This document shows, one piece after another, positions 7,212-18,438 of a stretch of DNA of 64,000 nucleotides. The notes under the pieces were generated by a model, which made no database searches, was not told the origin of the DNA, and saw nothing but the letters and a program-made list of their open reading frames with translations. The stretch spans positions 1 through 64,000 of IMG/VR virus record IMGVR_UViG_3300027770_001980. One strand, 5' to 3'. Position 1 is the stretch's first letter. Every line of letters starts with the position of its first letter. Made by a program: the position numbers and the translations under genes.

Positions 7212-7222
7212 TTTTATTTTGT

Positions 7223-7298
7223 TGGGGTGTCGCCTAGTGGCCTAAGGCAACGGTCTTTGAAATCGTCATCATGAGTTCGAATCTCATCTCCCCTGCCA
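7223..7298 (+). tRNA. tRNA-Gln(TTG)
   Basis: ACGGT-ctTTGaa-ATCGT, GCCA; acceptor stem has mismatches. Confidence 0.82.
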
Positions 7299-7317
7299 AA
7301 CATATTAGGAGAATGCA

Positions 7318-7446
7318 ATGGCTCACAAGCAACAAGGTATTCTAACAAAGAGTCCCCAATGGTGGAAGCACCTCAAGGACTGGAAACGTGTGTTCTGGAA
7401 ATCAGAACGCCAAGCACAGAAACGTAACATTAAACAAGGAGAATGA
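7318..7446 (+). CDS. small Trp/Lys-rich protein (42 aa)
   Basis: AGGAG RBS; MAHKQQGILTKSPQWWKHLKDWKRVFWKSERQAQKRNIKQGE*. Confidence 0.6.
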   Translation: MAHKQQGILTKSPQWWKHLKDWKRVFWKSERQAQKRNIKQGE

Positions 7447-7537
7447 CATGAAACGTTCAGGTAAACGATAGTGTCAATCTTAGATCCCGTATATGGTCTA
7501 GGGTTGGCACATTAAAGACAATTTAATATGCAATCAA

Positions 7538-7611
7538 CCCTCACAAACATTAAGGTGATGTAACCGGCTCTTAACCGGTAAAACACGGATCGTTACCGTG
7601 GTGTGGGACCA
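7538..7611 (+). tRNA. tRNA-Lys(CTT)
   Basis: ACCGG-ctCTTaa-CCGGT; variant T-loop ATCGTTA. Confidence 0.8.
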
Positions 7612-7617
7612 ATATAT

Positions 7618-7691
7618 GGGATCGTAACTTAAAAGTAAAGTATCGGACTTTTAATCCGACTAAGAAGGGGCAGTACCTTCCGGTCTCACCA
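7618..7691 (+). tRNA. tRNA-Lys(TTT)
   Basis: TCGGA-ctTTTaa-TCCGA; variant T-loop GGCAGTA. Confidence 0.82.
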
Positions 7692-7770
7692 TATAAAAAC
7701 ACATTGTCCTAGGCTGTGACCTAGTCCATCAGAAGTCCTTTGAGACAGAAACAATGTGTTTCTATATGGT
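7689..7770 (+). repeat. inverted-repeat-bracketed cassette B2
   Basis: CCATATAAAAACACATTGT / ACAATGTGTTCTCTATATGG; cargo hairpin CTAGG-CTGTGA-CCTAG. Confidence 0.75.
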
Positions 7771-7910
7771 AAAGAAGAAGCCGACATGGAAAGGTAGTGC
7801 AAAGGTATACAGTTGGTCTGGTTCGAAACAGAGTAAACTGATTGTATAATGAGCGTAGCACAACCCGCATCGCACGGGTAGTTAGTGGGTTCGATTCCCA
7901 TCTTTGTTAT
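7767..7910 (+). ncRNA. unassigned structured RNA with two T-loop mimics
   Basis: TCTG-GTTCGAAA-CAGA, ACCCG-catcgca-CGGGT, GTGGG-TTCGATT-CCCAT. Confidence 0.45.
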
Positions 7911-8025
7911 CATACATGAACACATTCAACGGTAAACAGGATACCTGGCAACTGGACGCAGGGGCTATCCCGAAGATGTAGGGCACTACCACCGTAAAGT
8001 CAGGAAATGAGTGTGTTCCTATATG
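7911..8025 (+). repeat. inverted-repeat-bracketed cassette B3
   Basis: CATACATGAACACATTCA / TGAGTGTGTTCCTATATG; inner ACGGT/ACCGT helix. Confidence 0.7.
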
Positions 8026-8100
8026 GTGTCTTTAGTGTAGTGGCCTGCACCCTGCTCTGTGAAAGCGGTAGTACCGGATCGATACCGGTAAGGCACCCCA
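8025..8100 (+). tRNA. tRNA-His(GTG)
   Basis: G-1 and C73, CTGCT-ctGTGaa-AGCGG. Confidence 0.88.
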
Positions 8101-8143
8101 ATATTTATTGTAGAGCATAAATACATTTATAAGGTGCTCTGCA

Positions 8144-8527
8144 ATGTTAAACTCAATATGTAAAAATTGTTCAAAAGAATTTATTAAAGGTCGAAATACA
8201 ACAGGGACATACTGTTCACTACCTTGCACTTTTGAATCTCAAAAAAAAGAAAGAAGAGAAAATTTCTTAGAAGGAAAAATGGTTAACCGTGGATTAATGA
8301 AACAACATATGGTTGATATTCACAGTTGGCAATGTATGTGTTGTAAAAACACTGAATGGTTAGGAGTGCCAATTCCGTTGGAGTTGGATCACATTGATGG
8401 TAATGCAGGAGACAATCGACCTGAAAATTTGCGATTGCTATGTCCAAACTGCCATGCACAGACTCCAACACATAAAGCAAAGAATAAAGGCAATGGCCGC
8501 GGGAGTCGCGGATTGCCCTGGTATTAA
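8144..8527 (+). CDS. HNH endonuclease
   Basis: LELDHIDGNAGDNRPENLRLLCPNCHAQT with Cys pairs. Confidence 0.85.
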   Translation: MLNSICKNCSKEFIKGRNTTGTYCSLPCTFESQKKERRENFLEGKMVNRGLMKQHMVDIHSWQCMCCKNTEWLGVPIPLELDHIDGNAGDNRPENLRLLCPNCHAQTPTHKAKNKGNGRGSRGLPWY

Positions 8528-8529
8528 TT

Positions 8530-8603
8530 CCTCTTGTAGTTAAATGGTATAACGGCCTCTTGATAAGTGGTTATTACAAGTTCGATTCTTGTCGAGAGGA
8601 CCA
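8530..8603 (+). tRNA. tRNA-Ile(GAT)
   Basis: ttGATaa loop, ACCA. Confidence 0.85.
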
Positions 8604-8610
8604 AGTTTAC

Positions 8611-8685
8611 GCCTGGTTAGTTCAGCGGAAGAACGTCTGCCCGATTAGCGGAATGTTGTAGGTTCGACTCCTACACCGGGTACCA
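8611..8685 (+). tRNA. tRNA-Ile(GAT)-like with variant loop
   Basis: TCTGC-ccGATta-GCGGA (C33, U37); otherwise a normal cloverleaf. Confidence 0.7.
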
Positions 8686-8692
8686 AATCAAT

Positions 8693-8767
8693 GCGCCCGT
8701 AGTATAATGGATAATACACTAGGCTACGAACTTAGGAATGGTGGTTCGATTCCATCCGGGCGCACCA
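8693..8767 (+). tRNA. tRNA-Arg(ACG)
   Basis: CTAGG-ctACGaa-CTTAG. Confidence 0.9.
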
Positions 8768-8775
8768 ATAGTTAA

Positions 8776-8865
8776 GGAAGCGTGGCAGAGCCCGGCTTAT
8801 TGCAGCAGTCTTGAAAACTGCCGACCCGAAAGGGTCCGTGAGTTCGAATCTCACCGCTTCCGCCA
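8776..8865 (+). tRNA. tRNA-Ser(TGA)
   Basis: GCAGT-ctTGAaa-ACTGC, long variable arm. Confidence 0.92.
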
Positions 8866-8882
8866 ATACAATAAATAAGTCT

Positions 8883-9626
8883 ATGCGAATACATGAACTT
8901 ATTGTAGAAACTACTGAGGAAGATCGTGCTATCATTAGCCTTGCTGATGTTATCTATAAGGATCTACAGCAATATGCTGATACAGAATTAGACTACGATG
9001 AAACAGGTGTGATGCACATTGGACGCATCGGTGATCTGTTTGATACTCCGATTCCCGGACTTGATCGCGTGAGATTAGAAATATCTTCAGATGAGTCCAT
9101 AGTGGATCTGGCACGTAGACTTCACGGTAAGGCTACACCGTCAGATAGTCATTTTGGACAATGGGATCCTATGGAGAAGGCGATATCTTTAAATGCTGAT
9201 TACTTGAGCTCTAATCGTATGCGTAGTGTCATAGCACATGAATTAAGACATGCCATGGACGATATGAAATCGTTGAATAGGGCTAACCAAAGTACACGAT
9301 ATCGTACAGCAAGGAAGCCCGAGCATCAAGCAGATAAAGATGGTGCTTATCAAGCACAACCTGCAGAAATCAATGCTAGGTTTATCGAAGCGTTGAATGT
9401 GTTAGTGCCCGTCATACCAAAGTTGGCAAATTTAGAACCTGCTGCATTTAGAACAAAGATGACAGCATATATAAACAAAGCATTTGAACTTAAAGACATC
9501 GCAGATTATTATCCAGAAAAGACAGCAAGTCCACACTATAAGAGATTGCTGCAACGAGCATGGGCTTTTATTGAAAAAGAGCTGGCTCACATACGATCAC
9601 AAACAGTTGACACAGCGGCGGAATAA
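8883..9626 (+). CDS. putative Zn metallopeptidase-like protein
   Basis: HExxH (AHELRH) plus downstream EINA; start moved to MRIHEL because the track start lies inside the tRNA. Confidence 0.55.
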   Translation: MRIHELIVETTEEDRAIISLADVIYKDLQQYADTELDYDETGVMHIGRIGDLFDTPIPGLDRVRLEISSDESIVDLARRLHGKATPSDSHFGQWDPMEKAISLNADYLSSNRMRSVIAHELRHAMDDMKSLNRANQSTRYRTARKPEHQADKDGAYQAQPAEINARFIEALNVLVPVIPKLANLEPAAFRTKMTAYINKAFELKDIADYYPEKTASPHYKRLLQRAWAFIEKELAHIRSQTVDTAAE

Positions 9627-9635
9627 GTATATAAT
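9607..9635 (+). promoter_or_regulatory. sigma70 promoter (internal to array)
   Basis: TTGACA-17-TATAAT. Confidence 0.8.
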
Positions 9636-9641
9636 ATACTT

Positions 9642-9750
9642 GCGACCGTGAGTGGAACATGGCAGACCTCCGGACCGGGGATTCTCGGCGAGGGATGGGG
9701 CGAAGTCTTAGACACAGCCTTTGTAGGTTCAAACCCTACCGGTCGTACCA
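9642..9750 (+). ncRNA. Leu-type tRNA-like RNA with expanded central domain (109 nt)
   Basis: GCGACCG/CGGTCGT acceptor + ACCA, Leu-like D-loop, T-arm; no canonical anticodon arm. Confidence 0.6.
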
Positions 9751-9762
9751 GTTAAGAATTAA

Positions 9763-9851
9763 GGAATGGTCCCATAATGGTATTGGAGCAGATTGCTAAT
9801 CTGTCGGTCGTTTAATACGGCTTCCGAGTTCGAGTCTCGGTCATTCCGCCA
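9763..9851 (+). tRNA. tRNA-Ser(GCT)
   Basis: GCAGA-ttGCTaa-TCTGT, long variable arm. Confidence 0.9.
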
Positions 9852-9872
9852 AGTTGATAAAAGAAGAATTAT

Positions 9873-10670
9873 ATGATTTTAGATTGTGTTACATTTTTTA
9901 ATGAGTTAGAATTATTAGAGGGTAGATTAGAATACCTGTATGATACCGTAGACTATTTTATCATAGTTGAAAGTGATACAACTCATAGTGGTCACCCTAA
10001 ACCTTTAAACTATTTGCCTAACATACAGAGATATAAAAAATATCTGGACAAGATAATTTATTTTCCGTATCCGGCAGAAATTAAAGATCTAAATATCGAT
10101 CAAACTCTTGATAAATTTGATTACGATTCCGCACATTGGAAAATAGAGAAAAGACAAAGAAGTCATATTCTTAATGCGATAAAATTTTTCAAGGATGACG
10201 ATATAGTATTGATCAGTGATGTTGATGAGATTCCTTCTAAATCTGCTATCGAGATAGCATCCGAGCAGTTAGGAAAATCAGCAGCAGCATTTTCATTATC
10301 ACAGGATTTTTTCTTTTATAATTTTGCTCAGAGGCAAAGTTTTCCGTGGAAAGGTACTGTTGTTTCTACAAACAAATTTGTTCAACAACAAGGTCCGCAG
10401 TGGCTTCGTGATATGCGTTGGGATATTCCAACAATATTTCAAGGTGGATATCATTTGAGCTACTGGGGTGATCCAGAACGTATCGCAACTAAGATACAGA
10501 ACTTTGCACATCAGGAACTCAACAAAGAAACCTTTACAGATACCGAACGTATAAAAGAAAGAATTAAATCAGGTAACGATCCGTTTGATCGTCAACCATT
10601 GATTCCTGTAGAACCGGAATCAATTCCAAAAGACATTTATGACATATTCAACAAATATGGCAGTAGTTAA
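9873..10670 (+). CDS. GT17-family (GnT-III-like) glycosyltransferase
   Basis: FFNELELLEGRL, VESDTTHSG, SDVDEIP, GYHLSY, KIQNFAHQE. Confidence 0.8.
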   Translation: MILDCVTFFNELELLEGRLEYLYDTVDYFIIVESDTTHSGHPKPLNYLPNIQRYKKYLDKIIYFPYPAEIKDLNIDQTLDKFDYDSAHWKIEKRQRSHILNAIKFFKDDDIVLISDVDEIPSKSAIEIASEQLGKSAAAFSLSQDFFFYNFAQRQSFPWKGTVVSTNKFVQQQGPQWLRDMRWDIPTIFQGGYHLSYWGDPERIATKIQNFAHQELNKETFTDTERIKERIKSGNDPFDRQPLIPVEPESIPKDIYDIFNKYGSS

Positions 10671-10674
10671 TTTG

Positions 10675-10763
10675 TATCTCTGGTGTAATGGTATTGGAGC
10701 GGATTGCTAATCCGTCGAGTTGCGAAAGCAGCTTTCTGAGTTCGAGTCTCAGTCATTCCGCCA
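10675..10763 (+). pseudogene. chimeric tRNA-Ser(GCT) with foreign 5' end
   Basis: D-loop to CCA resembles the 9763 Ser; 5' TATCTCT cannot pair with 3' TCATTCC. Confidence 0.7.
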
Positions 10764-10770
10764 AATAAAT

Positions 10771-10847
10771 GAGTCAGTAGTTCCAATTGGCAGAACGTTG
10801 GTCTCCAAAACCAAATGTTGTAGGTTCAAATCCTACCTGGCTCGCCA
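10771..10847 (+). tRNA. tRNA-Trp(CCA)
   Basis: TTGGT-ctCCAaa-ACCAA. Confidence 0.92.
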
Positions 10848-10871
10848 AACAAAGATAGTAAATAATAGTAT

Positions 10872-10945
10872 GCGGGTATGATGTAAAGGTAACCTGAAAC
10901 CTTGCCAAGGTTTATTTGAGAGTTCGATTCTCTCTACCCGCTCCA
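10872..10945 (+). tRNA. tRNA-Gly(GCC), copy 2
   Basis: AAACC-ttGCCaa-GGTTT. Confidence 0.9.
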
Positions 10946-10949
10946 AATA

Positions 10950-11045
10950 GGCCGGACCTGTATCCATATTCCGGCTCCGCTGACGCGAAAACAGGATGGG
11001 CTGCGCTCACGGGGTTTGATTGTTTCCCGACACAACAATAACAAT
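10950..11045 (+). ncRNA. unassigned pseudoknot-forming RNA
   Basis: GCCGGA/TCCGGC stem whose loop CCTGT can pair with ACAGG (10991-95). Confidence 0.4.
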
Positions 11046-11059
11046 CACCAAACATATGG

Positions 11060-11104
11060 CCTCACCCTCTAGCAACATAGTTCTACGGTGAGGTTTTCTT
11101 TTTT
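11060..11104 (+). terminator. terminator-like hairpin inside array
   Basis: CCTCACC/GGTGAGG with a long loop, followed by a T-rich tract. Confidence 0.45.
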
Positions 11105-11165
11105 AGGATAGCAACAGCAAACATTTAAAAACTTTTCTTGAACAAAAGCCAAAAATGCTATCCTG
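11105..11165 (+). ncRNA. CAGCAA-handle RNA E4
   Basis: AGGATAGCA/TGCTATCCT helix, ACAGCAAA, hairpin CTTTT-ctTGAac-AAAAG. Confidence 0.7.
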
Positions 11166-11174
11166 TTTTATTAT

Positions 11175-11250
11175 GCCATAGTAGCTCCAATGGTAGAGCA
11201 GCGGACTGAAAATTCGTGTGTTGCTGGTTCGAATCCAGCCTATGGTACCA
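11175..11250 (+). tRNA. tRNA-Phe(GAA)
   Basis: GCGGA-ctGAAaa-TTCGT. Confidence 0.92.
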
Positions 11251-11258
11251 ATTTATAA

Positions 11259-11266
11259 TATAAATA
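11259..11266 (+). promoter_or_regulatory. T4-like late promoter TATAAATA
   Basis: Exact octamer just upstream of the ATG; it also occurs at 13684, 49547, 52268 (+) and 27083, 44861, 51988 (-). Confidence 0.6.
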
Positions 11267-11271
11267 TTTTT

Positions 11272-11991
11272 ATGAAAATTGCAATATTACTATCCGGACA
11301 ACCAAGATTTACTCAAGAGTTTCAATTATTTTTAGATAATTTAGTAGGTTATGATCAAGCAGATTGGTTTGTTTACATGACCAATAATAATCACGATCCT
11401 TTTAAAGATAATCGCATTAAAATTCCAGAGACCTGGATAAATTATGAAATAGATTGGGCCAGAGAGACTATAACAAGAAATCTTCCTCCTAACAATTTTC
11501 TCAGACGTTTCGAAATATCGAATGTACACGAACAAATTTTTCCAACTCTTCGAGAAGAACATCTATCTGGTAATCAAGCTATTTTCAAAATGCACTATAA
11601 TATATTTAAAACAAATCAATTAAGAGAAGAATATGAAACCTCTTATAATTTTAAATACGATGCAATTGTTAGAGCCCGCCCCGATGTTGGACTTAATCAG
11701 ATAATAGATCTTCGAAAATTTGATTTGTCGACCAGGGGAGTCTTTATGCCTTGCCCTTTTTATGGACACCCAGGGAGAGAGTCTAATGATTTGATTGGAT
11801 TTGGTAATTCGGAGGTCATGTCTATTTACAGTAATGCCTTACATCATTTCAAAGAATATAGTGATGCTGGAGAAATAGTTTGCCCTGAAACACTATTATC
11901 ACGGCACTTGATTACAAATAATGTATCACGTATAAAATCTGATTTTAGTCACATTTTTCGAACTCTGCCTTTAGATCCTAAATGGTTTTGA
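11272..11991 (+). CDS. glycosyltransferase-like protein, paralog 1
   Basis: MKIAILLSGQPRF...KYDAIVRARPD...NDLIGFG; start reassigned out of tRNA-Phe. Confidence 0.6.
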   Translation: MKIAILLSGQPRFTQEFQLFLDNLVGYDQADWFVYMTNNNHDPFKDNRIKIPETWINYEIDWARETITRNLPPNNFLRRFEISNVHEQIFPTLREEHLSGNQAIFKMHYNIFKTNQLREEYETSYNFKYDAIVRARPDVGLNQIIDLRKFDLSTRGVFMPCPFYGHPGRESNDLIGFGNSEVMSIYSNALHHFKEYSDAGEIVCPETLLSRHLITNNVSRIKSDFSHIFRTLPLDPKWF

Positions 11992-12010
11992 GTGTCTGAA
12001 CTAATTACAT

Positions 12011-12097
12011 GGAAGATAGAAGTGCCGGGCACTAAGCAACTTGGAAAGTTGTTCCACTCTGAAAGGGGTGACAGTTCGACTCTGTTATCTTCCTCCA
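12011..12097 (+). tRNA. tRNA-Ser(GGA)
   Basis: GCAAC-ttGGAaa-GTTGT, long variable arm, atypical D-arm. Confidence 0.8.
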
Positions 12098-12117
12098 ACA
12101 CACTAAAGGAGCATAAC

Positions 12118-12180
12118 ATGTTAGTAATAGGATTATTAGTAATCATGGGTATGCTCTATTTGATTATTAGAAAGTTATAA
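12118..12180 (+). CDS. 20-aa hydrophobic peptide
   Basis: AAGGAG RBS; MLVIGLLVIMGMLYLIIRKL*. Confidence 0.5.
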   Translation: MLVIGLLVIMGMLYLIIRKL

Positions 12181-12181
12181 T

Positions 12182-12257
12182 GGTAGAGTAGCATAGCGGC
12201 TAATGCACCAGCTTCATACGCTGTCGATCGTGGGTTCGAGTCCCACCTCTACTACCA
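12182..12257 (+). tRNA. tRNA-Met(CAT)
   Basis: CAGC-ttCATac-GCTG. Confidence 0.85.
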
Positions 12258-12262
12258 ATCAA

Positions 12263-12382
12263 TGTCGTTGTCGTCTAATGGTAGGACGCTTATAAAAGGT
12301 TATCCTGTTAAGGATACAGTCAGCACAATCAAATTCCATGTCAAGGAAGAGATCTGGGTTCGAATCCCAGCTGCGACCCCCA
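12263..12382 (+). ncRNA. tRNA-like RNA with branched anticodon domain (~120 nt)
   Basis: Acceptor, D-arm, T-arm and CCA present; the centre holds TATCC-TGTTAA-GGATA and TTCC-atGTCaa-GGAA hairpins. Confidence 0.65.
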
Positions 12383-12388
12383 GTTTAT

Positions 12389-12464
12389 GTACATGAGCCC
12401 GAAGATTGAGGGTACCGTTAATTGAGACGGCGAAAGGCGATTGAGATGATACCCATGTACGCCA
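12389..12464 (+). ncRNA. 76-nt tRNA-like RNA lacking a TPsiC loop
   Basis: Perfect GTACATG/CATGTAC + GCCA; GCCC/GGGT and CCGTT/GACGG arms. Confidence 0.55.
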
Positions 12465-12466
12465 AG

Positions 12467-12615
12467 TTTCGAGATAGACGTAGAGATCGAGTCCCCTGTA
12501 CGCTAGTGCCCTATTTCTTGAGCATGACACACCAGTAGCAGTATCGGGTCAAGCAAAACTCTCTCATACGAGACAAACCAATGAGTCCTTGAGAAAGATA
12601 GTTGGAGGCTCGAAA
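12467..12615 (+). ncRNA. unassigned structured RNA (~150 nt)
   Basis: TTTCGAG/CTCGAAA closure; CTTGA/TCAAG and CTCAT/ATGAG helices. Confidence 0.45.
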
Positions 12616-12623
12616 ACCTATAT

Positions 12624-12709
12624 GCTCTGGTGCAGGGAATTGGAAGACCGGCAACGTTGAGAACGTTGTGACCTAACAGGTGTGGGTTCGAGTCCCACCC
12701 AGAGCACCA
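12624..12709 (+). tRNA. tRNA-Leu(GAG)
   Basis: CAACG-ttGAGaa-CGTTG. Confidence 0.88.
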
Positions 12710-12713
12710 ATTT

Positions 12714-12787
12714 AGTTCCTTAGTTTAATGGCAGAACACTACCTCGACACGGTGACAATGAAAGTTCGATTCTTTCAGGAACTACCA
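12714..12787 (+). tRNA. tRNA-Val(GAC)
   Basis: TACC-tcGACac-GGTG (C33 variant). Confidence 0.8.
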
Positions 12788-12877
12788 TATATAAAAACAT
12801 ATTAGGCCCTCGGTCGTAGACTTGAGTTGCGGGTATAGTGCCTTCCAAGCCGTGGACTCGAATGTGTTTTTATATAT
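12787..12877 (+). repeat. inverted-repeat-bracketed cassette B4
   Basis: ATATATAAAAACATATT / AATGTGTTTTTATATAT (17 bp); cargo has tRNA-Gly-like GCGGGTATAGT and GC-ctTCCaa-GC. Confidence 0.75.
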
Positions 12878-12905
12878 GAAAGTTCGATTCTTTCAGGAAC
12901 TACCA
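12876..12905 (+). repeat. 30-bp direct repeat of the tRNA-Val 3' end
   Basis: ATGAAAGTTCGATTCTTTCAGGAACTACCA, identical to 12758-12787. Confidence 0.9.
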
Positions 12906-12906
12906 A

Positions 12907-12981
12907 CTCTCTATAGTTCAATGGATAGAACACATTCCTCCTAAGAATGGGATGCAGGTTCGATTCCTGCTGGAGAGACCA
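12907..12981 (+). tRNA. tRNA-Arg(CCT)
   Basis: CATTC-ctCCTaa-GAATG. Confidence 0.92.
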
Positions 12982-12993
12982 AATAAATATTAT

Positions 12994-13070
12994 GCCCCGT
13001 TACGCTAATTGGTAGTGCGGATTCTCTCAAAAGGAGTTGGCTGTCTGTTCGAATCAGACACGGGGTACCA
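12994..13070 (+). tRNA. tRNA-Leu(CAA), short variable arm
   Basis: ATTCT-ctCAAaa-GGAGT; 77 nt. Confidence 0.78.
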
Positions 13071-13075
13071 CTTAT

Positions 13076-13150
13076 CGGTCTTTAGTGAAATGGATATCAT
13101 CTTTGTCTTCGAAACAAAAGTTGTGGGTTCGATCCCTGCAAGACCGGCCA
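13076..13150 (+). tRNA. tRNA-Arg(TCG)
   Basis: TTTGT-ctTCGaa-ACAAA. Confidence 0.9.
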
Positions 13151-13154
13151 ATCT

Positions 13155-13228
13155 GCTCCTATAGGTAAATGGTATACCAGCACTTTGGTAAAGTGCAATT
13201 ACAAGTTCGATTCTTGTTAGGAGCACCA
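13155..13228 (+). tRNA. tRNA-Thr(GGT)
   Basis: GCACT-ttGGTaa-AGTGC. Confidence 0.9.
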
Positions 13229-13236
13229 AAAAAAAC

Positions 13237-13265
13237 TTGACACACCGACAGAAATACAGTATAAT
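13237..13265 (+). promoter_or_regulatory. sigma70 promoter (internal to array)
   Basis: TTGACA-17-TATAAT. Confidence 0.8.
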
Positions 13266-13330
13266 TACTACATAGACAGCAAACGATAGAGTTAGTTGTT
13301 GTGTGTTCATTAACAATACAAGTTGGTTTT

Positions 13331-13414
13331 GCGGGTGTGGTGGAATGGTATACACAGCAGACTTAAAATCTGCCGCTGAAAAGCATGCCGGTTCGAGTCC
13401 GGCCACCCGCACCA
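13331..13414 (+). tRNA. tRNA-Leu(TAA)
   Basis: GCAGA-ctTAAaa-TCTGC. Confidence 0.92.
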
Positions 13415-13518
13415 TATTGAAACACATTGTGGAGAGCACTGTGTAGATTGAGAAGGTTTGATTCCGACTCACTACATCACTCGGTATCCTGCGGCCGCAA
13501 CAGTGTGCTTCAATATGG
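13412..13518 (+). repeat. inverted-repeat-bracketed cassette B5
   Basis: CCATATTGAAACACATTGT / ACAGTGTGCTTCAATATGG; cargo TGTAG/CTACA helix with GGTTTGATTCC T-loop mimic. Confidence 0.75.
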
Positions 13519-13522
13519 TGTT

Positions 13523-13641
13523 ATATTAAAATATACTTTTCGTCTCCAGTAGCCCAAACCCGGGGGAATCGCATATTGAGAATGTGCATAGCACAACGGT
13601 ACAGCAAGCATAAGACACTTGTTGGAAGTATGTTTTAATAT
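13523..13641 (+). repeat. inverted-repeat-bracketed cassette B6
   Basis: ATATTAAAATATACTT / AAGTATGTTTTAATAT; cargo GCATATT/AATGTGC hairpin. Confidence 0.72.
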
Positions 13642-13647
13642 GATTCC

Positions 13648-13680
13648 CTGGCGTTCGTATAATGGATAATACAGGGGATT
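13648..13680 (+). pseudogene. 5' half of a split tRNA-Arg(TCT)
   Basis: CTGGCGT acceptor strand, D-arm, GGGGA-TT; its partner half is at 14447-14488. Confidence 0.8.
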
Positions 13681-13698
13681 TAGTATAAATAGATATAT

Positions 13699-13775
13699 GC
13701 GACTGTAGCTCAGTTGGATAGAGTACCCGGCTTCTACCCGGATTGTCGGGGGTTCGAATCCCTCCAGTCGCACCA
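13699..13775 (+). tRNA. tRNA-Arg(TCT), replacement copy inside the insertion
   Basis: CCGG-ctTCTac-CCGG, full cloverleaf. Confidence 0.88.
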
Positions 13776-13790
13776 TTTAGTAGAAAATGT

Positions 13791-14429
13791 ATGTATCAAA
13801 AACTAACAAACTGTAAGCATTGTAATATCTCTTTAGAGAGTATGAATGCCAACGAAAGGGCAAACCATTCGAGATGGTGTACATCAAACCCTAAACGGGT
13901 TGAATATGTAAATGCGCTGGCCAAGCATAGAGAAAATATTGTCGCTCCTCGAAATCAATTTGTTAAAGCAAAAGACGAGGGACGACCTGTTCCAAAAGGA
14001 ACAATGACCGGAAAACCCGGAACGATGTTAGGTAAGAAACATTCTCTGGAAACAAAGCAACATCTTAAAGAAAAAGCGTTAGCAAGCCCACATAGAAGAT
14101 TAGTTAGGTCCATTAGAAAATATACACAAAAGGATGGAACTATTGTTAATTTAGATTCTTCTTGGGAAGAAGCATTGGCAATTCGCCTTGATGAACTTAA
14201 TGTTAATTGGATCCGACCCAAGCCGATAAAATGGATAGATGACAATGGTATAACCCATAACTATTTTCCAGACTTTTATCTTGTTGATTTCGACGTATAT
14301 TTAGATCCAAAAAATCCTTATGCTATTAAGGCACAGGAAAGCAAAATAAAATGTTTGACAAAACAGATAAAAAATCTTATAATCATAAGAGGATTAGAAG
14401 AGTGTAAAAATTATACCCCTATAGTTTAA
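13791..14429 (+). CDS. putative homing endonuclease (NUMOD3-like repeat + PD-(D/E)xK domain)
   Basis: GKKHSLETKQHL; DSSWE...YFPDFYL...YLDPKN. Confidence 0.7.
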   Translation: MYQKLTNCKHCNISLESMNANERANHSRWCTSNPKRVEYVNALAKHRENIVAPRNQFVKAKDEGRPVPKGTMTGKPGTMLGKKHSLETKQHLKEKALASPHRRLVRSIRKYTQKDGTIVNLDSSWEEALAIRLDELNVNWIRPKPIKWIDDNGITHNYFPDFYLVDFDVYLDPKNPYAIKAQESKIKCLTKQIKNLIIIRGLEECKNYTPIV

Positions 14430-14488
14430 TGGTAAAACGGCGGATTTCTACTCCCTAAATAGCAGTTCGATTCTGTTACGCCGGACCA
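14415..14488 (+). pseudogene. chimeric tRNA: foreign 5' half + 3' half of Arg(TCT)
   Basis: 3' TCTAC-TCCCT...ACGCCGG-ACCA complements 13648-13680, not the adjacent ACCCCTAT...GGCGGATT. Confidence 0.75.
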
Positions 14489-14499
14489 AAGATTTTATT

Positions 14500-14589
14500 G
14501 CGAGCGAGACTTGGAGTCCGAGGGGTCTTATATGCCCTTTCCGCCAGATTAGCGGCTTTGAGAGAGTTCGATTCTCTCCGCTCGTACCA
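14500..14589 (+). tRNA. tRNA-Ile(TAT)-like with long variable arm
   Basis: GGGT-ctTATat-GCCC, short D-arm, extra CCGC-cagatta-GCGG hairpin. Confidence 0.65.
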
Positions 14590-14638
14590 CCTATCACAAT
14601 TAGGTTCTTTTGTTAAAATATCATATAATTAATATATT

Positions 14639-15340
14639 ATGAACAATGAAAAACATCAACCTATTACAGTGGTAGTGCCTACCATGTGGAGACATTCTCC
14701 ATTTTTAGATTTTGCACAGGACTTCTTAGAATTAAATGTAGTCGAACATTTAATCATCATCGACAATGATATCTCAAGAAGACCCAACCATCCGGTATTG
14801 ACCAATTCCAAAATAACTATTTTTGAATTTGGAAAAAATATATTTGTCAATCCTGCTTGGAACTTAGGAGTCAACAACAGCAAAACTAATATTGTTTGCA
14901 TATTGAATGATGATTTAAATTTTGATATCAGATTATTCAATAGAGTATCTAAGTTTATTAAACCTGATATGGGTGCAATAGGATTGAGTAACGGAATAGC
15001 AGAATTTGGACAAACAATTTTAACTGACGGAATGATCAATTTTGAACCATTTCATGGACAGATATGTGAAGGATTTGGTAATCTCATGTTTGTACATAAA
15101 TCTACATGGAAAGATATACCCGAAGGGTTGAATATCGCATATGGAGATAATTTCATTTTCGAACAAAATCTTTACAACAATCGAACAAACTATTTTATTG
15201 TTAATATGTTTCATCACCATGCAGCATCTACCACAGTTAAAGAAGTATTAAAAGATAAAGATGTGAAAGATGTTTTTTGGCTACGAGAAAGTCTTCTATA
15301 TAAAGACATCAAGGTCAAATTAATGAATAGAACATTTTAG
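14639..15340 (+). CDS. GT2-like glycosyltransferase
   Basis: VVVPTMW, IIDND, VNPAWNLG, LNDD, YGDNFI. Confidence 0.7.
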   Translation: MNNEKHQPITVVVPTMWRHSPFLDFAQDFLELNVVEHLIIIDNDISRRPNHPVLTNSKITIFEFGKNIFVNPAWNLGVNNSKTNIVCILNDDLNFDIRLFNRVSKFIKPDMGAIGLSNGIAEFGQTILTDGMINFEPFHGQICEGFGNLMFVHKSTWKDIPEGLNIAYGDNFIFEQNLYNNRTNYFIVNMFHHHAASTTVKEVLKDKDVKDVFWLRESLLYKDIKVKLMNRTF

Positions 15341-15350
15341 AAAGAATAGT

Positions 15351-15425
15351 GGGCTTTTAGCTTAATGGTAAAGCAGTCGACTCATAATCGATTGAGTGTA
15401 GGTTCAATTCCTACAAAGCCCACCA
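15351..15425 (+). tRNA. tRNA CAT (Ile2/lysidine-type or Met)
   Basis: GTCGA-ctCATaa-TCGAT; GGGC acceptor resembles Ile2. Confidence 0.82.
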
Positions 15426-15466
15426 TATCTCAAAGTTAGAGATAAATACTCTAACCGGAGCACGTA

Positions 15467-15895
15467 ATGTTAAAAGAATATACATGTAAAGATTGTGGTA
15501 AAGAAGGAAAAGAAAATTTTTATCAATATCGATATCAATGCAAATCTTGTTGGAATAAACGCACATATCAATCAAGTAGAGATAAATTAGATTTACTCAT
15601 ACACGAAAGAGGCGGAAAATGCGAAAGATGTGGATACAATAAATGCATGGATGCTTTACAGTGGCATCATATAGATCCTACAATTAAAGAGTTTGGAATA
15701 AGCAAACAACGAGGTGCATCGATAGAAGTATTACGAAAAGAAATTGATAAGTGTTCTTTATTATGTGCAAACTGTCATGTCGAGGTACATGCAGAAATGC
15801 GAAATAAAGGATATAAAGTTGTCAGAATTACCCATCCAGAATTTAAAGAAAGATATTTTTCTGGTAAGGGATTTTTAGATTTAATGCGGGTGTGA
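15467..15895 (+). CDS. HNH endonuclease
   Basis: CERCGYNKCMDALQWHHIDP...LLCANCHVEVH. Confidence 0.85.
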   Translation: MLKEYTCKDCGKEGKENFYQYRYQCKSCWNKRTYQSSRDKLDLLIHERGGKCERCGYNKCMDALQWHHIDPTIKEFGISKQRGASIEVLRKEIDKCSLLCANCHVEVHAEMRNKGYKVVRITHPEFKERYFSGKGFLDLMRV

Positions 15896-15972
15896 TGAAA
15901 TTGGTAGACTTCCGGTCCTTAGAAGTCCGGGTTCGAAAGAGCGTGCTGGTTCGAGTCCAGTCACCCGCACCA
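15886..15972 (+). tRNA. tRNA-Leu(TAG)
   Basis: ctTAGaa loop, long variable arm. Confidence 0.85.
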
Positions 15973-15979
15973 TTATAGG

Positions 15980-16008
15980 TTGACAACTTACCTACATAGT
16001 TGTATAAT
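15980..16008 (+). promoter_or_regulatory. sigma70 promoter
   Basis: TTGACA-17-TATAAT. Confidence 0.8.
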
Positions 16009-16029
16009 TAATTTTAATAAAAGGAAAGT

Positions 16030-16206
16030 ATGAAAACAACTGCAACATTTCGATTGAATAAGCGTTTCAAAACACTTATCTCTGCTATGCCATTTAAGAG
16101 CCAAGAACAACGTGACCATTTTCGTCACATGATGATCGAGGCACAGGTAGCAGCAAATACCATTGTCAAGAGTTCTAAGGACCGTAACAACAACCGAGGT
16201 GAATAA
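16030..16206 (+). CDS. hypothetical protein (58 aa)
   Basis: AAGGA RBS; MKTTATFRLNKRFK...RGE*; coupled to rpoZ. Confidence 0.65.
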   Translation: MKTTATFRLNKRFKTLISAMPFKSQEQRDHFRHMMIEAQVAANTIVKSSKDRNNNRGE

Positions 16207-16430
16207 TGAAAACTCCAGATTTTGTTAACAGTCTTGACACCGACAAGTGTGTGTCTAACATTGGTAGCCGATTTGATTTAGTTATTGTTGCTGCTATTCG
16301 TGCCCGCGAGTTGAATCGTGGTCATAGAAAAATGGTCAATAGTCCAAATGGTAATATTGTTAGTGCTCTGCAAGAAATCGAAGCAGGACACATTGGGCGT
16401 GATTACTTGCGAAAGGTTCGTCGACCATGA
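16206..16430 (+). CDS. rpoZ: RNA polymerase omega subunit homolog
   Basis: SRFDLVIVAAIRAREL...IVSALQEIEAGHI matches the RpoZ family core. Confidence 0.8.
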   Translation: MKTPDFVNSLDTDKCVSNIGSRFDLVIVAAIRARELNRGHRKMVNSPNGNIVSALQEIEAGHIGRDYLRKVRRP

Positions 16431-16603
16431 GCAAAGGTTCCAGACAGCGTCCAACAGATCTAAATAAGTTTCGATCAAACTACGATGCTATCTTCCGAAA
16501 GCCTTCTCCAAAAGAAGTAGATGATGCTCAAGCAGAAGATGAAGCATTCAAGAGAGTTGAAGAACAGCAATCACAAGTTCGAGACAGTGACCAAGGCGGC
16601 TAA
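16427..16603 (+). CDS. hypothetical protein (58 aa)
   Basis: MSKGSRQRPTDLNKFRSNYDAIFRK...GG*; ATGA overlap. Confidence 0.6.
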   Translation: MSKGSRQRPTDLNKFRSNYDAIFRKPSPKEVDDAQAEDEAFKRVEEQQSQVRDSDQGG

Positions 16604-16616
16604 TAAATAGAGATGC

Positions 16617-16690
16617 GCCCTACTAGTACAATGGTAGTACACTGGTTTTGTAATCCTGTGATGGCAGTTCGATTCTGTCGTAGGGCACCA
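16617..16690 (+). tRNA. tRNA-Thr(TGT), copy 2
   Basis: ttTGTaa loop; weak anticodon stem. Confidence 0.8.
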
Positions 16691-16698
16691 AGAGATAT

Positions 16699-16772
16699 GC
16701 GGGGTTCGTAAAATGGTATTACCTTAGCCTTCCAAGCTAAAGTCAGGAGTTCGATTCTCCTACCCCGCTCCA
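16699..16772 (+). tRNA. tRNA-Gly(TCC), copy 2
   Basis: TTAGC-ctTCCaa-GCTAA. Confidence 0.92.
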
Positions 16773-17041
16773 AGTCTATGCAATATGTTTAGTGCTCTAT
16801 TACGCAGCCGTTGAGTAAACTCCGACTCTGATAACACGCCTTTAGCAAGATTACACTTGCGACATGTTACTTGTAAGTTATTGAAATCAGTGGTGCCACC
16901 TTGTGATTCTGGAATGACATGATCCATATGTATTTCAGAGTCTGACAAATCGTCATCACAATAAACACAGTAGAGGCCATCGCGTTCAATAACTCTACGG
17001 CGTAGATTTAATGGTATGCGTTCTTTTTTTTGTAGCATCAA
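16760..17041 (-). CDS. HNH endonuclease
   Basis: RDGLYCVYC...MDHVIPESQGG...NLQVTCRKCNLAKG. Confidence 0.85.
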   Translation of the reverse strand: MMLQKKERIPLNLRRRVIERDGLYCVYCDDDLSDSEIHMDHVIPESQGGTTDFNNLQVTCRKCNLAKGVLSESEFTQRLRNRALNILHRLGAG

Positions 17042-17076
17042 AAATATTTAGTAAATAGAGTTTTAATGTATTAAGA

Positions 17077-17151
17077 GCCTGGTTAGCTCAGGGGGAGAGC
17101 GGCTGCTTTACACGCAGCGGGTCGGCGGTTCGAAACCGTCACCGGGTACCA
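17077..17151 (+). tRNA. tRNA-Val(TAC)
   Basis: GCTGC-ttTACac-GCAGC. Confidence 0.92.
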
Positions 17152-17159
17152 GTTTTATT

Positions 17160-17891
17160 TTAAATCCATCTTGGATCCAATGGTAAATCTCTCAGAGAAT
17201 TATCAAAATTTCCGGGTGTATAAGAAATTTTGTTTGAATTTAAATGATGTCCAAGAATAGCTTCTGGACCAAAATCCAATACTTGTTTTTCATATTCTTC
17301 AAGATGATTTATGACATCCGAATAGATTGTCATAACATCAGAGTTTCCAAATGCAAATTGATCGTTTGACTGAGAAACCTCTCCATACCATCTATTGCCA
17401 GGCATGATAACAACTTGAGAACTTAGATCATAATTGTTGATATTTAATTCAATTGGTAATCCAATATCAGTTCGTGTTCTAATTACTGCATCATATTTAA
17501 AATTATTCTCTTGTTCGTAGTTTACTCTTAACTGATTAACCTTGTATAGATTATAATACATATTGAATATATTATCGGTACCTATACCTCGATAATCTCG
17601 AACAGGAGGCCATTGTTGAAGATGAACATCGGATATTTCAAATTTTTTAAGAAAATTGTTGTTTGGTAAATTTTCAATTATTTTGGATGTAGCCCATTCA
17701 ATGTCATAATTAATCCATTTATCGTGAGGTGGAATAATATGAGAATTTTTTATTTTTAAGTCTTCTCTGGTAGGACTGTTGGTAAGATACACAAACCAAT
17801 CTGCCTGATTGTAACCTTTTAAATTATTTAGAAAATTTCTGAGGTCGCCGGTGAATCTCGGTTCTCCAGGAAGTAGTATAGCTATTCTCAT
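17160..17891 (-). CDS. glycosyltransferase-like protein, paralog 2
   Basis: MRIAILLPGEPRFTGD...KYDAVIRTRTD...NDQFAFG. Confidence 0.6.
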   Translation of the reverse strand: MRIAILLPGEPRFTGDLRNFLNNLKGYNQADWFVYLTNSPTREDLKIKNSHIIPPHDKWINYDIEWATSKIIENLPNNNFLKKFEISDVHLQQWPPVRDYRGIGTDNIFNMYYNLYKVNQLRVNYEQENNFKYDAVIRTRTDIGLPIELNINNYDLSSQVVIMPGNRWYGEVSQSNDQFAFGNSDVMTIYSDVINHLEEYEKQVLDFGPEAILGHHLNSNKISYTPGNFDNSLRDLPLDPRWI

Positions 17892-17922
17892 AAATAATAT
17901 TTATGTTAGCATATAACGATGA

Positions 17923-18159
17923 TTGATTGATTATTTATTGGCTTTTTTTGCTATCTTCTTCACTGACATCTTTTATACATATTACTTGAAGGCTGTGCAT
18001 GAAGAGCAAACACTAAAGGCCAGTTGCTGGGCAACGATAGTCTATGTGGTTGCGGCAGTGGCAATTATAGAGTATAATAGTAATCATATGTTATTGATTC
18101 CAGCGGCAGCGGGTGCATTTTGTGGCACTTGGGTTGGAATGAAAATTAGAAAGAGATAA
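17923..18159 (+). CDS. small membrane protein
   Basis: About three hydrophobic segments. Confidence 0.6.
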   Translation: MIDYLLAFFAIFFTDIFYTYYLKAVHEEQTLKASCWATIVYVVAAVAIIEYNSNHMLLIPAAAGAFCGTWVGMKIRKR

Positions 18160-18160
18160 T

Positions 18161-18239
18161 CTCCGGTTCGCCTAACCTGGTTATGGCACCTCGTTTGGGA
18201 CGAGGAATAATGTGAGTTCGAATCCCACACTGGAGACCA
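18161..18239 (+). tRNA. tRNA-Pro(TGG), copy 2
   Basis: CCTCG-ttTGGga-CGAGG. Confidence 0.88.
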
Positions 18240-18246
18240 AAGAACA

Positions 18247-18410
18247 GCGGATAAGTTACATTATCCAGTATGAGTCGCTAAGGTAGGTACCTAATCCTTA
18301 GGGCAAGTAATAGTACACAATAGCGATGTAACAGGAAGTAGTGATCTACTCACCGGGACGGGCCTCAAAACGAATCCCACCAAGTTAACTCGCCATGGCA
18401 CACGGCGTAC
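18247..18410 (+). ncRNA. unassigned structured RNA
   Basis: GGATAA/TTATCC, TAAGG/CCTTA, AGTAG/CTACT, GGGA/TCCC and CGCC/GGCG hairpins between two tRNAs. Confidence 0.45.
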
Positions 18411-18438
18411 AATAGGACAAATTGTGTGGCACGAATAT

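What the first reader, a model, noticed from the sequence alone, without database searches (positions are those of the whole stretch)
12758..12905. Cassette B4 is flanked by a perfect 30-bp duplication of the tRNA-Val 3' end
Seen: ATGAAAGTTCGATTCTTTCAGGAACTACCA occurs at 12758-87 and at 12876-905, bracketing the 91-bp cassette. Known: integrative elements typically duplicate tRNA 3' ends (attL/attR). Inference: this is a recent insertion of a tiny non-autonomous element, or a slippage duplication. It is the best evidence that the stalk cassettes move.
Basis: partly seen in the sequence, partly recalled or inferred. Interest (0 to 1): 0.6.

Follow-up and report, generated by a model that had tools for sequence, protein, structure and literature searches.

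The report
Recombination scar in phage tRNA array
The 30-base repeat is real, but it is most likely the scar of an unequal crossover between two naturally occurring versions of a giant phage's tRNA gene array, not the footprint of a tiny jumping element; the hairpin "cassette" it brackets belongs to a widespread, undescribed family of phage RNA hairpins anchored on tRNA ends.

Summary
The 30-nt 3' end of tRNA-Val(GAC) occurs exactly twice (12758-87, 12876-905) and nowhere else in the 221-kb phage record. It brackets an 88-nt hairpin.

The attL/attR reading is not supported:
- The hairpin is one of more than 200 "stalk cassettes" found in over 100 uncultivated phage tRNA arrays. Each starts at C74 of a tRNA's CCA, and many end on the next tRNA. 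None of the others has a flanking duplication.
- One relative (L164) carries the same cassette (84/88 identical) after the same tRNA-Val. There it abuts tRNA-Leu(CAA) with no duplication.
- Nineteen other contigs carry intact Val-N-Arg(CCT) with no cassette.
- No integrase, resolvase or Y1 transposase is found in the record.

The window looks like these two haplotypes fused. It reads Val-B4 up to ...ATATATG, then the last 27 nt of a second Val, then A and Arg(CCT). The join falls at a 3-nt ATG microhomology. Similar half-tRNA scars occur nearby, in a split tRNA-Arg(TCT), and in relative L178.

Cassettes do change place, but through recombination. One example is an allelic core swap inside the same stalk (L161 versus L164).

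Read-level checks could not be run.

The parts
12624..12709 (+). tRNA-Leu(GAG), upstream neighbour, separated from tRNA-Val by ATTT
   Evidence: ARAGORN and Rfam tRNA. The same Leu-ATTT-Val junction is seen in L182 and G018.
12714..12787 (+). Intact tRNA-Val(GAC) with encoded CCA
   Evidence: ARAGORN; Rfam tRNA 54.4 bits. 71/74 identical to the Val of L164.
12758..12787 (+). Repeat copy R1: variable loop, T arm, 3' acceptor strand and ACCA of tRNA-Val
   Evidence: Exact 30-mer.
12786..12803 (+). 5' arm of the B4 stalk. It starts inside the CCA of tRNA-Val. The canonical outermost C74 pair is lost here.
   Evidence: Fold. Family register: in 108 of 109 cassettes the stalk starts at C74 of the upstream tRNA.
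12804..12860 (+). B4 core (57 nt), a structured RNA core with homologues in 24 other viral loci
   Evidence: Pattern scan, contexts, alignment fold A2. A compensatory G.U to U-A change relative to L164 is seen.
12861..12878 (+). 3' arm of the B4 stalk. It ends ...ATATATG, identical to the arm end in L164 and L143, where the G is nt 1 of tRNA-Leu(CAA).
12876..12878 (+). ATG, the proposed 3-nt microhomology at the illegitimate junction. It is shared by the stalk end and the Val variable loop.
   Evidence: Comparison of the window with L164 (...TATATATG|CCC) and with Val-N-Arg haplotypes (...GATG|AAAG).
12876..12905 (+). Repeat copy R2: a 5'-truncated tRNA-Val fragment. No tRNA is called here.
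   Evidence: Exact 30-mer. No ARAGORN or Rfam call at 12788-12906. In 13 other contigs the same 30-mer closes an intact Val that lies one base upstream of an Arg(CCT) gene; that base is A in 12 of them.
12907..12981 (+). tRNA-Arg(CCT), the usual downstream neighbour of this tRNA-Val in relatives
   Evidence: Val-N-Arg(CCT) adjacency is seen in 19 other contigs.
12994..13070 (+). tRNA-Leu(CAA), the gene that directly follows the cassette in L164, L161 and L143
7688..7770 (+). Stalk cassette of the same family with a different core, after tRNA-Lys(UUU)
   Evidence: The same core occurs in L023, L044 and L090.
7910..8026 (+). Stalk cassette of the same family, ending on G-1 of tRNA-His
   Evidence: The same core occurs in L014, L047 and G018.
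13411..13519 (+). Stalk cassette of the same family, after tRNA-Leu(UAA)
   Evidence: An identical core occurs in L015.

Best explanation
The window is the first 64 kb of an uncultivated, tailed jumbo phage from a group of lake phages, with more than 41 tRNA genes. The piece between the repeats is an ordinary member of a phage-specific family of 'stalk cassettes'. These are RNA hairpins on the tRNA strand. Their conserved 18-bp stalk starts at C74 of one tRNA's CCA and often ends on the first bases of the next tRNA. They carry highly variable cores.

The 30-nt repeat was not made by cassette insertion. It is the scar of one unequal, microhomology-mediated crossover or template switch (homology-facilitated illegitimate recombination). 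The crossover joined two array haplotypes that both exist in related phages:
- (A) Val - B4 cassette - Leu(CAA)
- (B) Val - N - Arg(CCT) - Leu(CAA)

The recombinant reads through haplotype A to the end of the stalk (...ATATATG). It then re-enters haplotype B in the variable loop of its tRNA-Val at ...ATG|AAAG. This keeps a 27-nt 3' stump of the second Val. With the shared ATG, the repeat reads as 30 nt.

Shown: the repeat, the family, both parental arrangements, the empty sites, and the absence of repeats around other cassettes. Inferred: the single-crossover mechanism, and the possible role of the HNH or other homing-type endonucleases in the array in supplying breaks. The stump is probably non-functional. 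It leaves the B4 RNA with a 3' tail, because the next RNase P site lies before Arg(CCT).
For: - Left junction is canonical for the family: 108 of 109 cassettes that follow an ARAGORN tRNA start at C74. The right junction is the only abnormal one.
- L164 is haplotype A. Its Val is 71/74 identical with R identical 30/30, its B4 is 84/88 identical, and its stalk end ...TATATATG runs straight into Leu(CAA) with no repeat.
- L143 and L161 show the same stalk-end to Leu(CAA) join.
- Haplotype B exists. Intact Val is followed after 1 nt by Arg(CCT) in 19 other contigs, 13 of them with the exact 30-mer. L182, L189 and L213 carry the window-type Arg(CCT) followed by Leu(CAA).
- About 216 stalk cassettes in 119 loci and 24 other B4-type loci show no flanking duplication.
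- No Phage_integrase, Resolvase or Y1_Tnp is found in 221 kb; the searches' control genomes did give hits.
- The same kind of scar recurs. The window holds the two halves of G018's tRNA-Arg(TCT) at 13648-13681 and 14442-14488. They are split by 760 nt carrying another tRNA-Arg(TCT) and an endonuclease-like ORF, with a GGATTT microhomology at the join.
- L178 differs from L161 by a roughly 680-nt ORF-bearing block flanked by a 56-nt repeat of the Val 3' part with 1 mismatch.
- L164, L182 and G018 are relatives at about 79-84% nucleotide identity in alignable parts, with the same array neighbourhood.
Against: - The exact parental genomes are not sampled. The relatives showing haplotypes A and B are about 80-86% identical, not sister strains.
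- A 3-nt microhomology is short and could be coincidence.
- R1 and R2 are identical, so nothing says which side came from which parent, or how old the event is.
- The product is formally indistinguishable from a 118-bp insertion (cassette plus R) into a Val-A-Arg(CCT) site.
- Only about 62% of the genome is in the record, so a recombinase could lie in the missing part.
- No read-level data could be examined.
Confidence: 0.6

Rival explanations
1. Site-specific integration: a miniature non-autonomous integrative element (cassette plus a copy of the tRNA-Val 3' end as attP) integrated into tRNA-Val, leaving attL and attR.
For: The X-R-I-R layout, with R being a tRNA 3' end including CCA, is what tRNA-targeting integrases leave (established knowledge). 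Empty sites exist in relatives. The stalk arms are inverted repeats.
Against: - No tyrosine or serine recombinase or Y1 transposase is found in 221 kb.
- The element would be 88-118 bp, with nothing inside but a canonical family hairpin.
- L164 has the same cassette at the same tRNA without attR.
- More than 200 family members have no flanking repeats.
- The left junction is simply the family's normal CCA anchoring.
Confidence: 0.1
2. Intramolecular replication error: in an ancestor with Val-B4-A-Arg(CCT), hairpin-induced slippage or template switching re-copied the Val 3' end after the cassette. Alternatively, a tandem duplication of Val+B4 was followed by deletion.
For: The stalk is a strong hairpin. 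The ATG microhomology fits slippage. Tandem tRNA duplicates exist in the array, for example Ile(GAT) twice at 8530-8685.
Against: - A single slip gives R-I-R-I, so a second event is needed to remove the second cassette.
- The required ancestor Val-B4-A-Arg(CCT) was not found among 75 Val contexts, whereas both parents of the crossover model were.
Confidence: 0.15
3. The repeat is kept by selection. The second T arm plus ACCA gives the cassette RNA a tRNA-like 3' end, or lets the Val 5' half pair with either copy as an alternative fold that regulates maturation.
For: The minimum-energy fold of 12714-12981 pairs the Val 5' acceptor strand with R2 and lengthens the stalk by GGAAC/GUUC (inverted repeat I3 of 25 nt).
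Against: The arrangement is seen only in this phage and an identical contig. No other cassette has such a tail. The fold's z-score is only -2.4, and co-transcriptional folding would favour R1.
Confidence: 0.07
4. Assembly artefact.
For: Repeats can mislead assemblers, and no reads could be inspected.
Against: The repeat is only 30 nt. Two contigs from different IMG datasets agree base for base over 8.4 kb. Each half of the structure is a natural arrangement in other contigs.
Confidence: 0.03

Closest known systems
attL/attR repeats of integrative elements at tRNA 3' ends
   Same: A direct repeat equal to the 3' part of a tRNA gene including CCA brackets foreign DNA. The tRNA stays intact. Empty sites exist in relatives.
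   Different: There is no integrase in the element or in the 221 kb. The insert is an 88-nt hairpin that normally sits at tRNA ends without any repeat. The same insert occurs at the same tRNA without a repeat in L164.
Homology-facilitated illegitimate recombination / microhomology-mediated template switching (the known route for partial gene duplications; from general knowledge, phages with recombination-dependent replication recombine often)
   Same: One side is anchored in homology (tRNA-Val). The other side joins at a 3-nt microhomology. The product is a partial duplication and both parental arrangements exist.
   Different: No experiment was done. The event is inferred from metagenomic haplotypes only.
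Free-standing homing endonuclease genes in phage tRNA clusters (e.g. SegB in the T4 tRNA region; from memory)
   Same: HNH and NUMOD-like endonuclease ORFs lie between tRNA genes. A tRNA-Arg(TCT) is split by such a block.
   Different: No endonuclease gene lies within or next to the B4 repeat. Cleavage specificity is unknown.
RNase III processing stalks of rRNA/tRNA operons and T7 early RNase III sites (from memory)
   Same: A long stem formed by sequences flanking an embedded RNA, lying between genes of a polycistronic stable-RNA transcript.
   Different: The stalk's primary sequence is conserved across very different phages. It has a recurrent A.C mismatch and a G.U pair, and a fixed register on CCA. 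No phage RNase III is found, and cleavage is untested.
HDV-like theta ribozymes next to phage tRNAs (PMC10879173)
   Same: A structured RNA placed directly at the 3' end of phage tRNA genes, with a proposed role in tRNA maturation.
   Different: No Rfam ribozyme or any other family matches the cassettes, even at a permissive E-value threshold of 5. Cores are of at least 87 unrelated kinds, and some cassettes have no core at all.
Y RNA / YrlA with Ro60 (PMC4201824)
   Same: A conserved closing stem plus a variable, sometimes tRNA-like module. A DUF2828 + vWA-like protein is encoded beside the array.
   Different: No TROVE domain is found. The DUF2828 protein is present in only 2 of 11 near-complete stalk-bearing genomes. 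There is only a weak sub-threshold YrlA match elsewhere in the array.

Membership tests
tRNA-targeting integrative element (attL/attR) | Direct repeat identical to the tRNA 3' end on both sides of the element | tested here: met
   30/30 identical copies at 12758-87 and 12876-905.
tRNA-targeting integrative element (attL/attR) | Tyrosine or serine recombinase in the element or in the genome | tested here: not met
   PF00589 and PF00239 give 0 matches in 221 kb, while the searches' control genomes gave hits. The record is only about 62% complete.
tRNA-targeting integrative element (attL/attR) | Other insertions of the same element also carry the flanking repeat | tested here: not met
   L164 has the same cassette at the same tRNA with no repeat. 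The 24 other B4-type loci have none.
MITE / transposon with target-site duplication | Terminal inverted repeats | tested here: met
   The stalk arms are 18-nt inverted repeats. However, sense-strand G.U pairs are frequent (for example at position 16) while sense-strand A.C pairs are confined mainly to position 8. This points to RNA pairing on the tRNA strand.
MITE / transposon with target-site duplication | A duplication of fixed length at every copy | tested here: not met
   The longest shared flank in about 216 copies is 12 nt or less, and those are T-loops of neighbouring tRNAs.
MITE / transposon with target-site duplication | Cognate transposase | tested here: inconclusive
   Y1_Tnp is absent. 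DDE families were not searched, and the genome is incomplete.
Stalk-cassette family (defined here; not in Rfam 15) | Stalk starts at C74 of the upstream tRNA's CCA, on the tRNA strand | tested here: met
   The ACCA of Val runs into TATATAAAAACA. The register is shared by 108 of 109 cassettes. In B4 the outermost C74 pair is lost.
Stalk-cassette family (defined here; not in Rfam 15) | Conserved 18-bp stalk sequence with covarying positions | tested here: met
   Both arms match the family pattern with 1-3 mismatches. Pair statistics on 117 unique cassettes show position 7 as A-U 65, U-A 34, G-C 14. Covariation is also seen in alignment A2.
Stalk-cassette family (defined here; not in Rfam 15) | 3' arm abuts or overlaps the next tRNA, or a short spacer | tested here: not met
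   Here the arm runs into a 5'-truncated tRNA-Val stump. In 43 of 68 cassettes followed by a tRNA, the arm overlaps that tRNA's first bases.
Tandem duplication by replication slippage | Head-to-tail repeat of the whole unit (R-I-R-I) | tested here: not met
   There is only one cassette copy. The layout is R-I-R followed by Arg(CCT).
Known ribozymes and other Rfam RNA families | Covariance-model match | tested here: not met
   No non-tRNA family hits 12788-12875 or the other cassettes at E up to 5. None was found in 7 related loci at E up to 0.01.
Y RNA with Ro60 | Ro60 (TROVE) partner encoded with the RNA | tested here: not met
   PF05731 is absent. The DUF2828/vWA-like neighbour is present in only 2 of 11 near-complete stalk-bearing genomes.

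The most novel reading that the evidence does not exclude
The stalk cassettes may be a previously undescribed, phage-specific class of modular RNA genes. A universal 18-bp stalk is anchored in fixed register on the CCA of one tRNA and on the first bases of the next. RNase P and tRNA 3'-end processing would then release each cassette as a hairpin-closed small RNA. The conserved arms would also act as portable homology that lets phages swap cores, at least 87 kinds of which were seen, at a fixed site. The B4 repeat would be a rare mis-step of that exchange traffic. In the set sampled here, 74 of the 109 cassettes that follow a called tRNA sit after Lys(UUU), Glu(UUC) or Gln(UUG), which hints at a link to tRNA-targeted defence.
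Probability: 0.35. Interest if true: 0.75.

Novelty: new member of a known kind. Interest (0 to 1): 0.42.

Why it matters
The repeat is a rare datable scar showing how large phage tRNA arrays are rebuilt. Whole tRNA genes, half-tRNAs and inter-tRNA hairpins are shuffled between co-circulating relatives by homologous and microhomology-mediated recombination, not by a dedicated integrase. This corrects an attractive but wrong reading (attL/attR).

The work also drew attention to the cassette family itself. It is a phage-restricted RNA hairpin with a conserved stalk, found in more than 100 uncultivated phage contigs. It is absent from Rfam and was not found in the deposited phage genomes searched. 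If its function can be found, it would add a new component to phage tRNA biology, whether in tRNA maturation, small RNAs or counter-defence.

Tried and rejected
- Rfam at gathering and at permissive thresholds: only tRNAs. No ribozyme, Y RNA, GOLLD or ROOL falls on any cassette.
- Ro60/Y-RNA idea: TROVE is absent. The DUF2828 + DUF7788 (vWA-like) gene at 18911-20326 lies beside arrays in 11 of 144 loci, but in only 2 of 11 near-complete stalk-bearing genomes. It has no PDB sequence relative. It was dropped as an obligate partner.
- Recombinase hunt: Phage_integrase, Resolvase and Y1_Tnp are absent. RNase III is also absent.
- Deposited phages: blastn of 7600-8100 and of a core-less stalk found nothing meaningful.
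The stalk is therefore phage-specific, and no host could be named.
- Literature: four full-text searches found no description of these hairpins.
I did not try to get reads another way.
- ARAGORN in intron mode did not resolve the two tRNA-like genes with 40-50-nt inserts.
- The ORF inside the L178 insertion has no Pfam or PHROG match.

Full report
**1. The observation**

The 30-mer that ends tRNA-Val(GAC) occurs at 12758-12787 and again at 12876-12905.
- Both copies are exact, and none is expected by chance.
- No third copy exists in the whole 221-kb record.
- The flanking bases differ on both sides, so the repeat is exactly 30 nt.
- Copy 1 is the variable loop, T arm, 3' acceptor strand and encoded ACCA of an intact tRNA-Val at 12714-12787.
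- Copy 2 is followed by a single A and then tRNA-Arg(CCT) at 12907-12981.

The 88 nt in between fold into an 18-bp stalk (12786-12803 paired with 12861-12878) with a 57-nt core. The stalk uses C75-A76 of copy 1 and the ATG of copy 2.

An IMG/VR contig from another dataset (L002) is identical over 8,420 bp, including the repeat. I took that as final.

**2. Setting**

- The window is the start of a linear IMG/VR virus record of 221,356 bp, estimated 62% complete.
- It carries long-tail-fibre genes.
- An array of at least 41 tRNA genes lies at 5650-18512, all on the + strand.
- Interspersed in the array are consensus sigma-70-like promoters (family D19), HNH endonuclease ORFs, and other ORFs.

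**3. The cassette is one of a large family**

The same stalk occurs at four places in the window: 7688-7770, 7910-8026, 12786-12878 and 13411-13519. Each starts at the CCA of a tRNA.

*How widespread it is*
- 91 of 126 pattern matches had the complementary arm within 300 nt.
- A looser search gave about 216 cassettes.
- Deposited phage genomes gave nothing.
- Rfam has no matching family.
- Four literature searches found no description.

*Anatomy*
- In 108 of 109 cassettes that follow a called tRNA, the stalk begins at C74.
- In 43 of 68 cassettes followed by a tRNA, the last one or two stalk bases are that tRNA's first bases.
- Across 117 unique cassettes the stalk is almost always paired.
- Position 7 covaries: A-U 65, U-A 34, G-C 14.
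- Position 16 is usually U.G, and position 8 is often A.C.
- G.U pairs fall on the tRNA strand.
- Cores run from 3 to 207 nt and fall into at least 87 unrelated clusters.
- Individual cores are nevertheless conserved between phages.

*Reading.* These are RNA-level hairpins that fill inter-tRNA spacers in fixed register. How they are cut, and what the cores do, is not shown. My inference is release by RNase P on one side and tRNA 3' processing on the other.

**4. B4 in relatives**

The B4 core motif occurs in 25 viral loci, including L002, the contig identical to the window. In the other loci it lies:
- after Lys(UUU) and before Met (L047, L137, L142, L122);
- after Glu (L121, L129, L136);
- after another cassette (L123 and others);
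- after Thr(GGT) and before Leu(CAA) (L143).

No flanking repeat is seen in any of these. The alignment supports the stalk and two core hairpins.

**5. The tRNA-Val site in relatives**

The 27-nt core of the repeat was scanned in IMG/VR (14 loci) and in JGI/ENA metagenomes (61 loci). The contexts are listed.
- Intact Val is followed after one base by an Arg(CCT) gene in 19 contigs other than the window's own record. Thirteen of these have the exact 30-mer.
- L182, L189 and L213 have Leu(GAG)-ATTT-Val-C-Arg(CCT, window type)-Leu(CAA).
- Val is followed directly by Leu(CAA) in G018/L144/L185, L177, L192, L206 and L208. G018 is a syntenic relative whose array segments are 69-100% identical to the window's (most of the longer ones 78-98%).
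- Val is followed by a stalk cassette in six other contigs, with four different cores.
- L164 has Val (71/74 identical, repeat region 30/30), then B4 (84/88 identical, including one compensatory change). Its stalk end ...TATATATG runs straight into Leu(CAA). There is no second copy of the Val end.
- L161 has the same Val, the same stalk and the same Leu(CAA), but an unrelated core. That is an allelic core replacement.

**6. Explanation**

Only the right-hand junction of B4 is abnormal. The stalk end ...ATATATG is followed by AAAG..., which is nucleotide 49 onward of a tRNA-Val. The Val-A-Arg(CCT) junction after that is the common one.

The window is therefore haplotype A (Val-B4-...) joined to haplotype B (...Val-A-Arg(CCT)-Leu(CAA)). 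The join is at an ATG shared by the stalk end and the Val variable loop. One illegitimate crossover or template switch, anchored on the left by Val homology, is enough. It yields a 27-nt stump that reads as a 30-nt repeat.

Two similar scars support this mode of evolution.
- In the window, the tRNA-Arg(TCT) of G018 is present as two halves (13648-13681 and 14442-14488, each 100% identical). They are separated by 760 nt holding another tRNA-Arg(TCT), an endonuclease-like ORF with a weak NUMOD3 motif, and the 5' part of a foreign tRNA joined at GGATTT.
- L178 differs from L161 by an ORF-bearing block flanked by a 56-nt repeat of the Val 3' part.

**7. Rivals**

- *Integrase-type attL/attR.* This fails on three counts. 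No recombinase is found. No repeat is seen at any other copy. The same cassette sits at the same tRNA without a repeat.
- *Simple slippage.* This predicts two cassette copies. Its required ancestor, Val-B4-A-Arg(CCT), was not found among 75 contexts.
- *A selected alternative fold.* This is suggested only by an energy minimum in which the Val 5' strand pairs with copy 2. The arrangement is unique to this phage.
- *Assembly artefact.* This is unlikely but could not be excluded with reads.

**8. Known relatives and novelty**

The repeat is a new instance of a known process: homology-facilitated illegitimate recombination leaving a partial gene duplication. It resembles attL/attR only in layout.

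The cassette family itself was not found in the libraries and papers searched. Its nearest functional analogies are RNase III processing stalks and the theta ribozymes that flank phage tRNAs (PMC10879173). No defining feature of either was met.

A Ro60/Y-RNA link was considered because a DUF2828 + vWA-like gene adjoins the array. It was set aside for three reasons:
- no TROVE domain is found;
- only 2 of 11 near-complete stalk-bearing genomes have the gene;
- the protein has no PDB sequence relative.

**9. Verdict**

Cassettes do change neighbours and cores, but by recombination, and this repeat is a crossover scar, not an insertion footprint.
- The finding itself is of moderate interest. The family it belongs to deserves its own study.

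Noticed in passing
window 13648-13681 and 14442-14488 (with 13699-13775 and ORF 13743-14429 in between): The tRNA-Arg(TCT) that is intact in relative G018 is split here into two 100%-identical halves sharing GGATTT. The 760 nt between them hold a different tRNA-Arg(TCT), an endonuclease-like ORF (PHROG endonuclease, weak NUMOD3), and the 5' part of another tRNA. It looks like a mobile endonuclease block that brought its own replacement tRNA.
   Followed up: partly
L178 (minus strand) compared with L161: A second, independent partial duplication of the same tRNA-Val. A 56-nt 3' part (1 mismatch) flanks a block of about 680 nt carrying a 205-aa ORF with no family match. The truncated copy is followed by the stalk cassette and Leu(CAA).
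   Followed up: partly
L161 versus L164 (Val - stalk - Leu(CAA)): The flanking tRNAs and the stalk arms are the same, but the cores are unrelated. This is an allelic core replacement inside a constant stalk, and it is better evidence that cassettes move than the B4 repeat.
   Followed up: partly
119 viral loci, tally: Of the 109 cassettes that follow a called tRNA, 45 follow Lys(UUU), 17 follow Glu(UUC) and 12 follow Gln(UUG). From memory, these are the three tRNAs with thiolated wobble uridine that several anticodon nucleases target. The tally is not corrected for relatedness of the contigs or for the seed pattern used.
   Followed up: no
window 12264-12378 and 7788-7909: Full-length Rfam tRNA matches (39.3 and 27.1 bits) stretch over 115 and 122 nt, meaning tRNA-like genes with a 40-50-nt insert. 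The first is conserved in L161, L178 and L002. ARAGORN does not call them, even in intron mode.
   Followed up: partly
window 12379-12623: A spacer of about 245 nt between the tRNA-like gene and Leu(GAG), whose downstream part (from 12459) lies in a stretch 98% identical to G018. A similar block (GAGATAGACG...GCTAGTGCCCTATT...) directly follows tRNA-Val in L169, L194 and L208. It may be another structured RNA.
   Followed up: no
window 5977-6049, 7145-7222, 11099-11174, 18512-18535, 18695-18716: A second repeat family after tRNA ends (AGTTTTAGGATAGCAACAGCAAAC ... GCTATCCTGTTTTATT), forming a different hairpin. It is also seen after tRNAs in L033, L067 and L021 (families D14/D15).
   Followed up: no
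window 18911-20326: A 471-aa protein with DUF2828 + DUF7788 and a DxSxS (MIDAS-like) motif lies just after the array. It is 64-81% identical in nine full-length matches, among homologues in 11 of 144 array loci, but present in only 2 of 11 near-complete stalk-bearing genomes. It has no PDB sequence relative.
   Followed up: partly
window 11218-11991 (+) and 17160-17891 (-): Paralogous ORFs (weak DUF7796 matches) in opposite orientation inside the tRNA array. They are seen as 56-nt and 47-nt inverted repeats at about 80% (I1/I2).
   Followed up: no
G018 (L145, minus strand) versus window: Single tRNA genes differ in position between close relatives. Arg(CCT) and Arg(TCG) lie between Val and Thr(GGT) in the window but elsewhere in G018. 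G018 also carries the c7910-type core inside the B4-type stalk variant (CCATATATAAAAACA...). Stalks and cores therefore reassort.
   Followed up: partly
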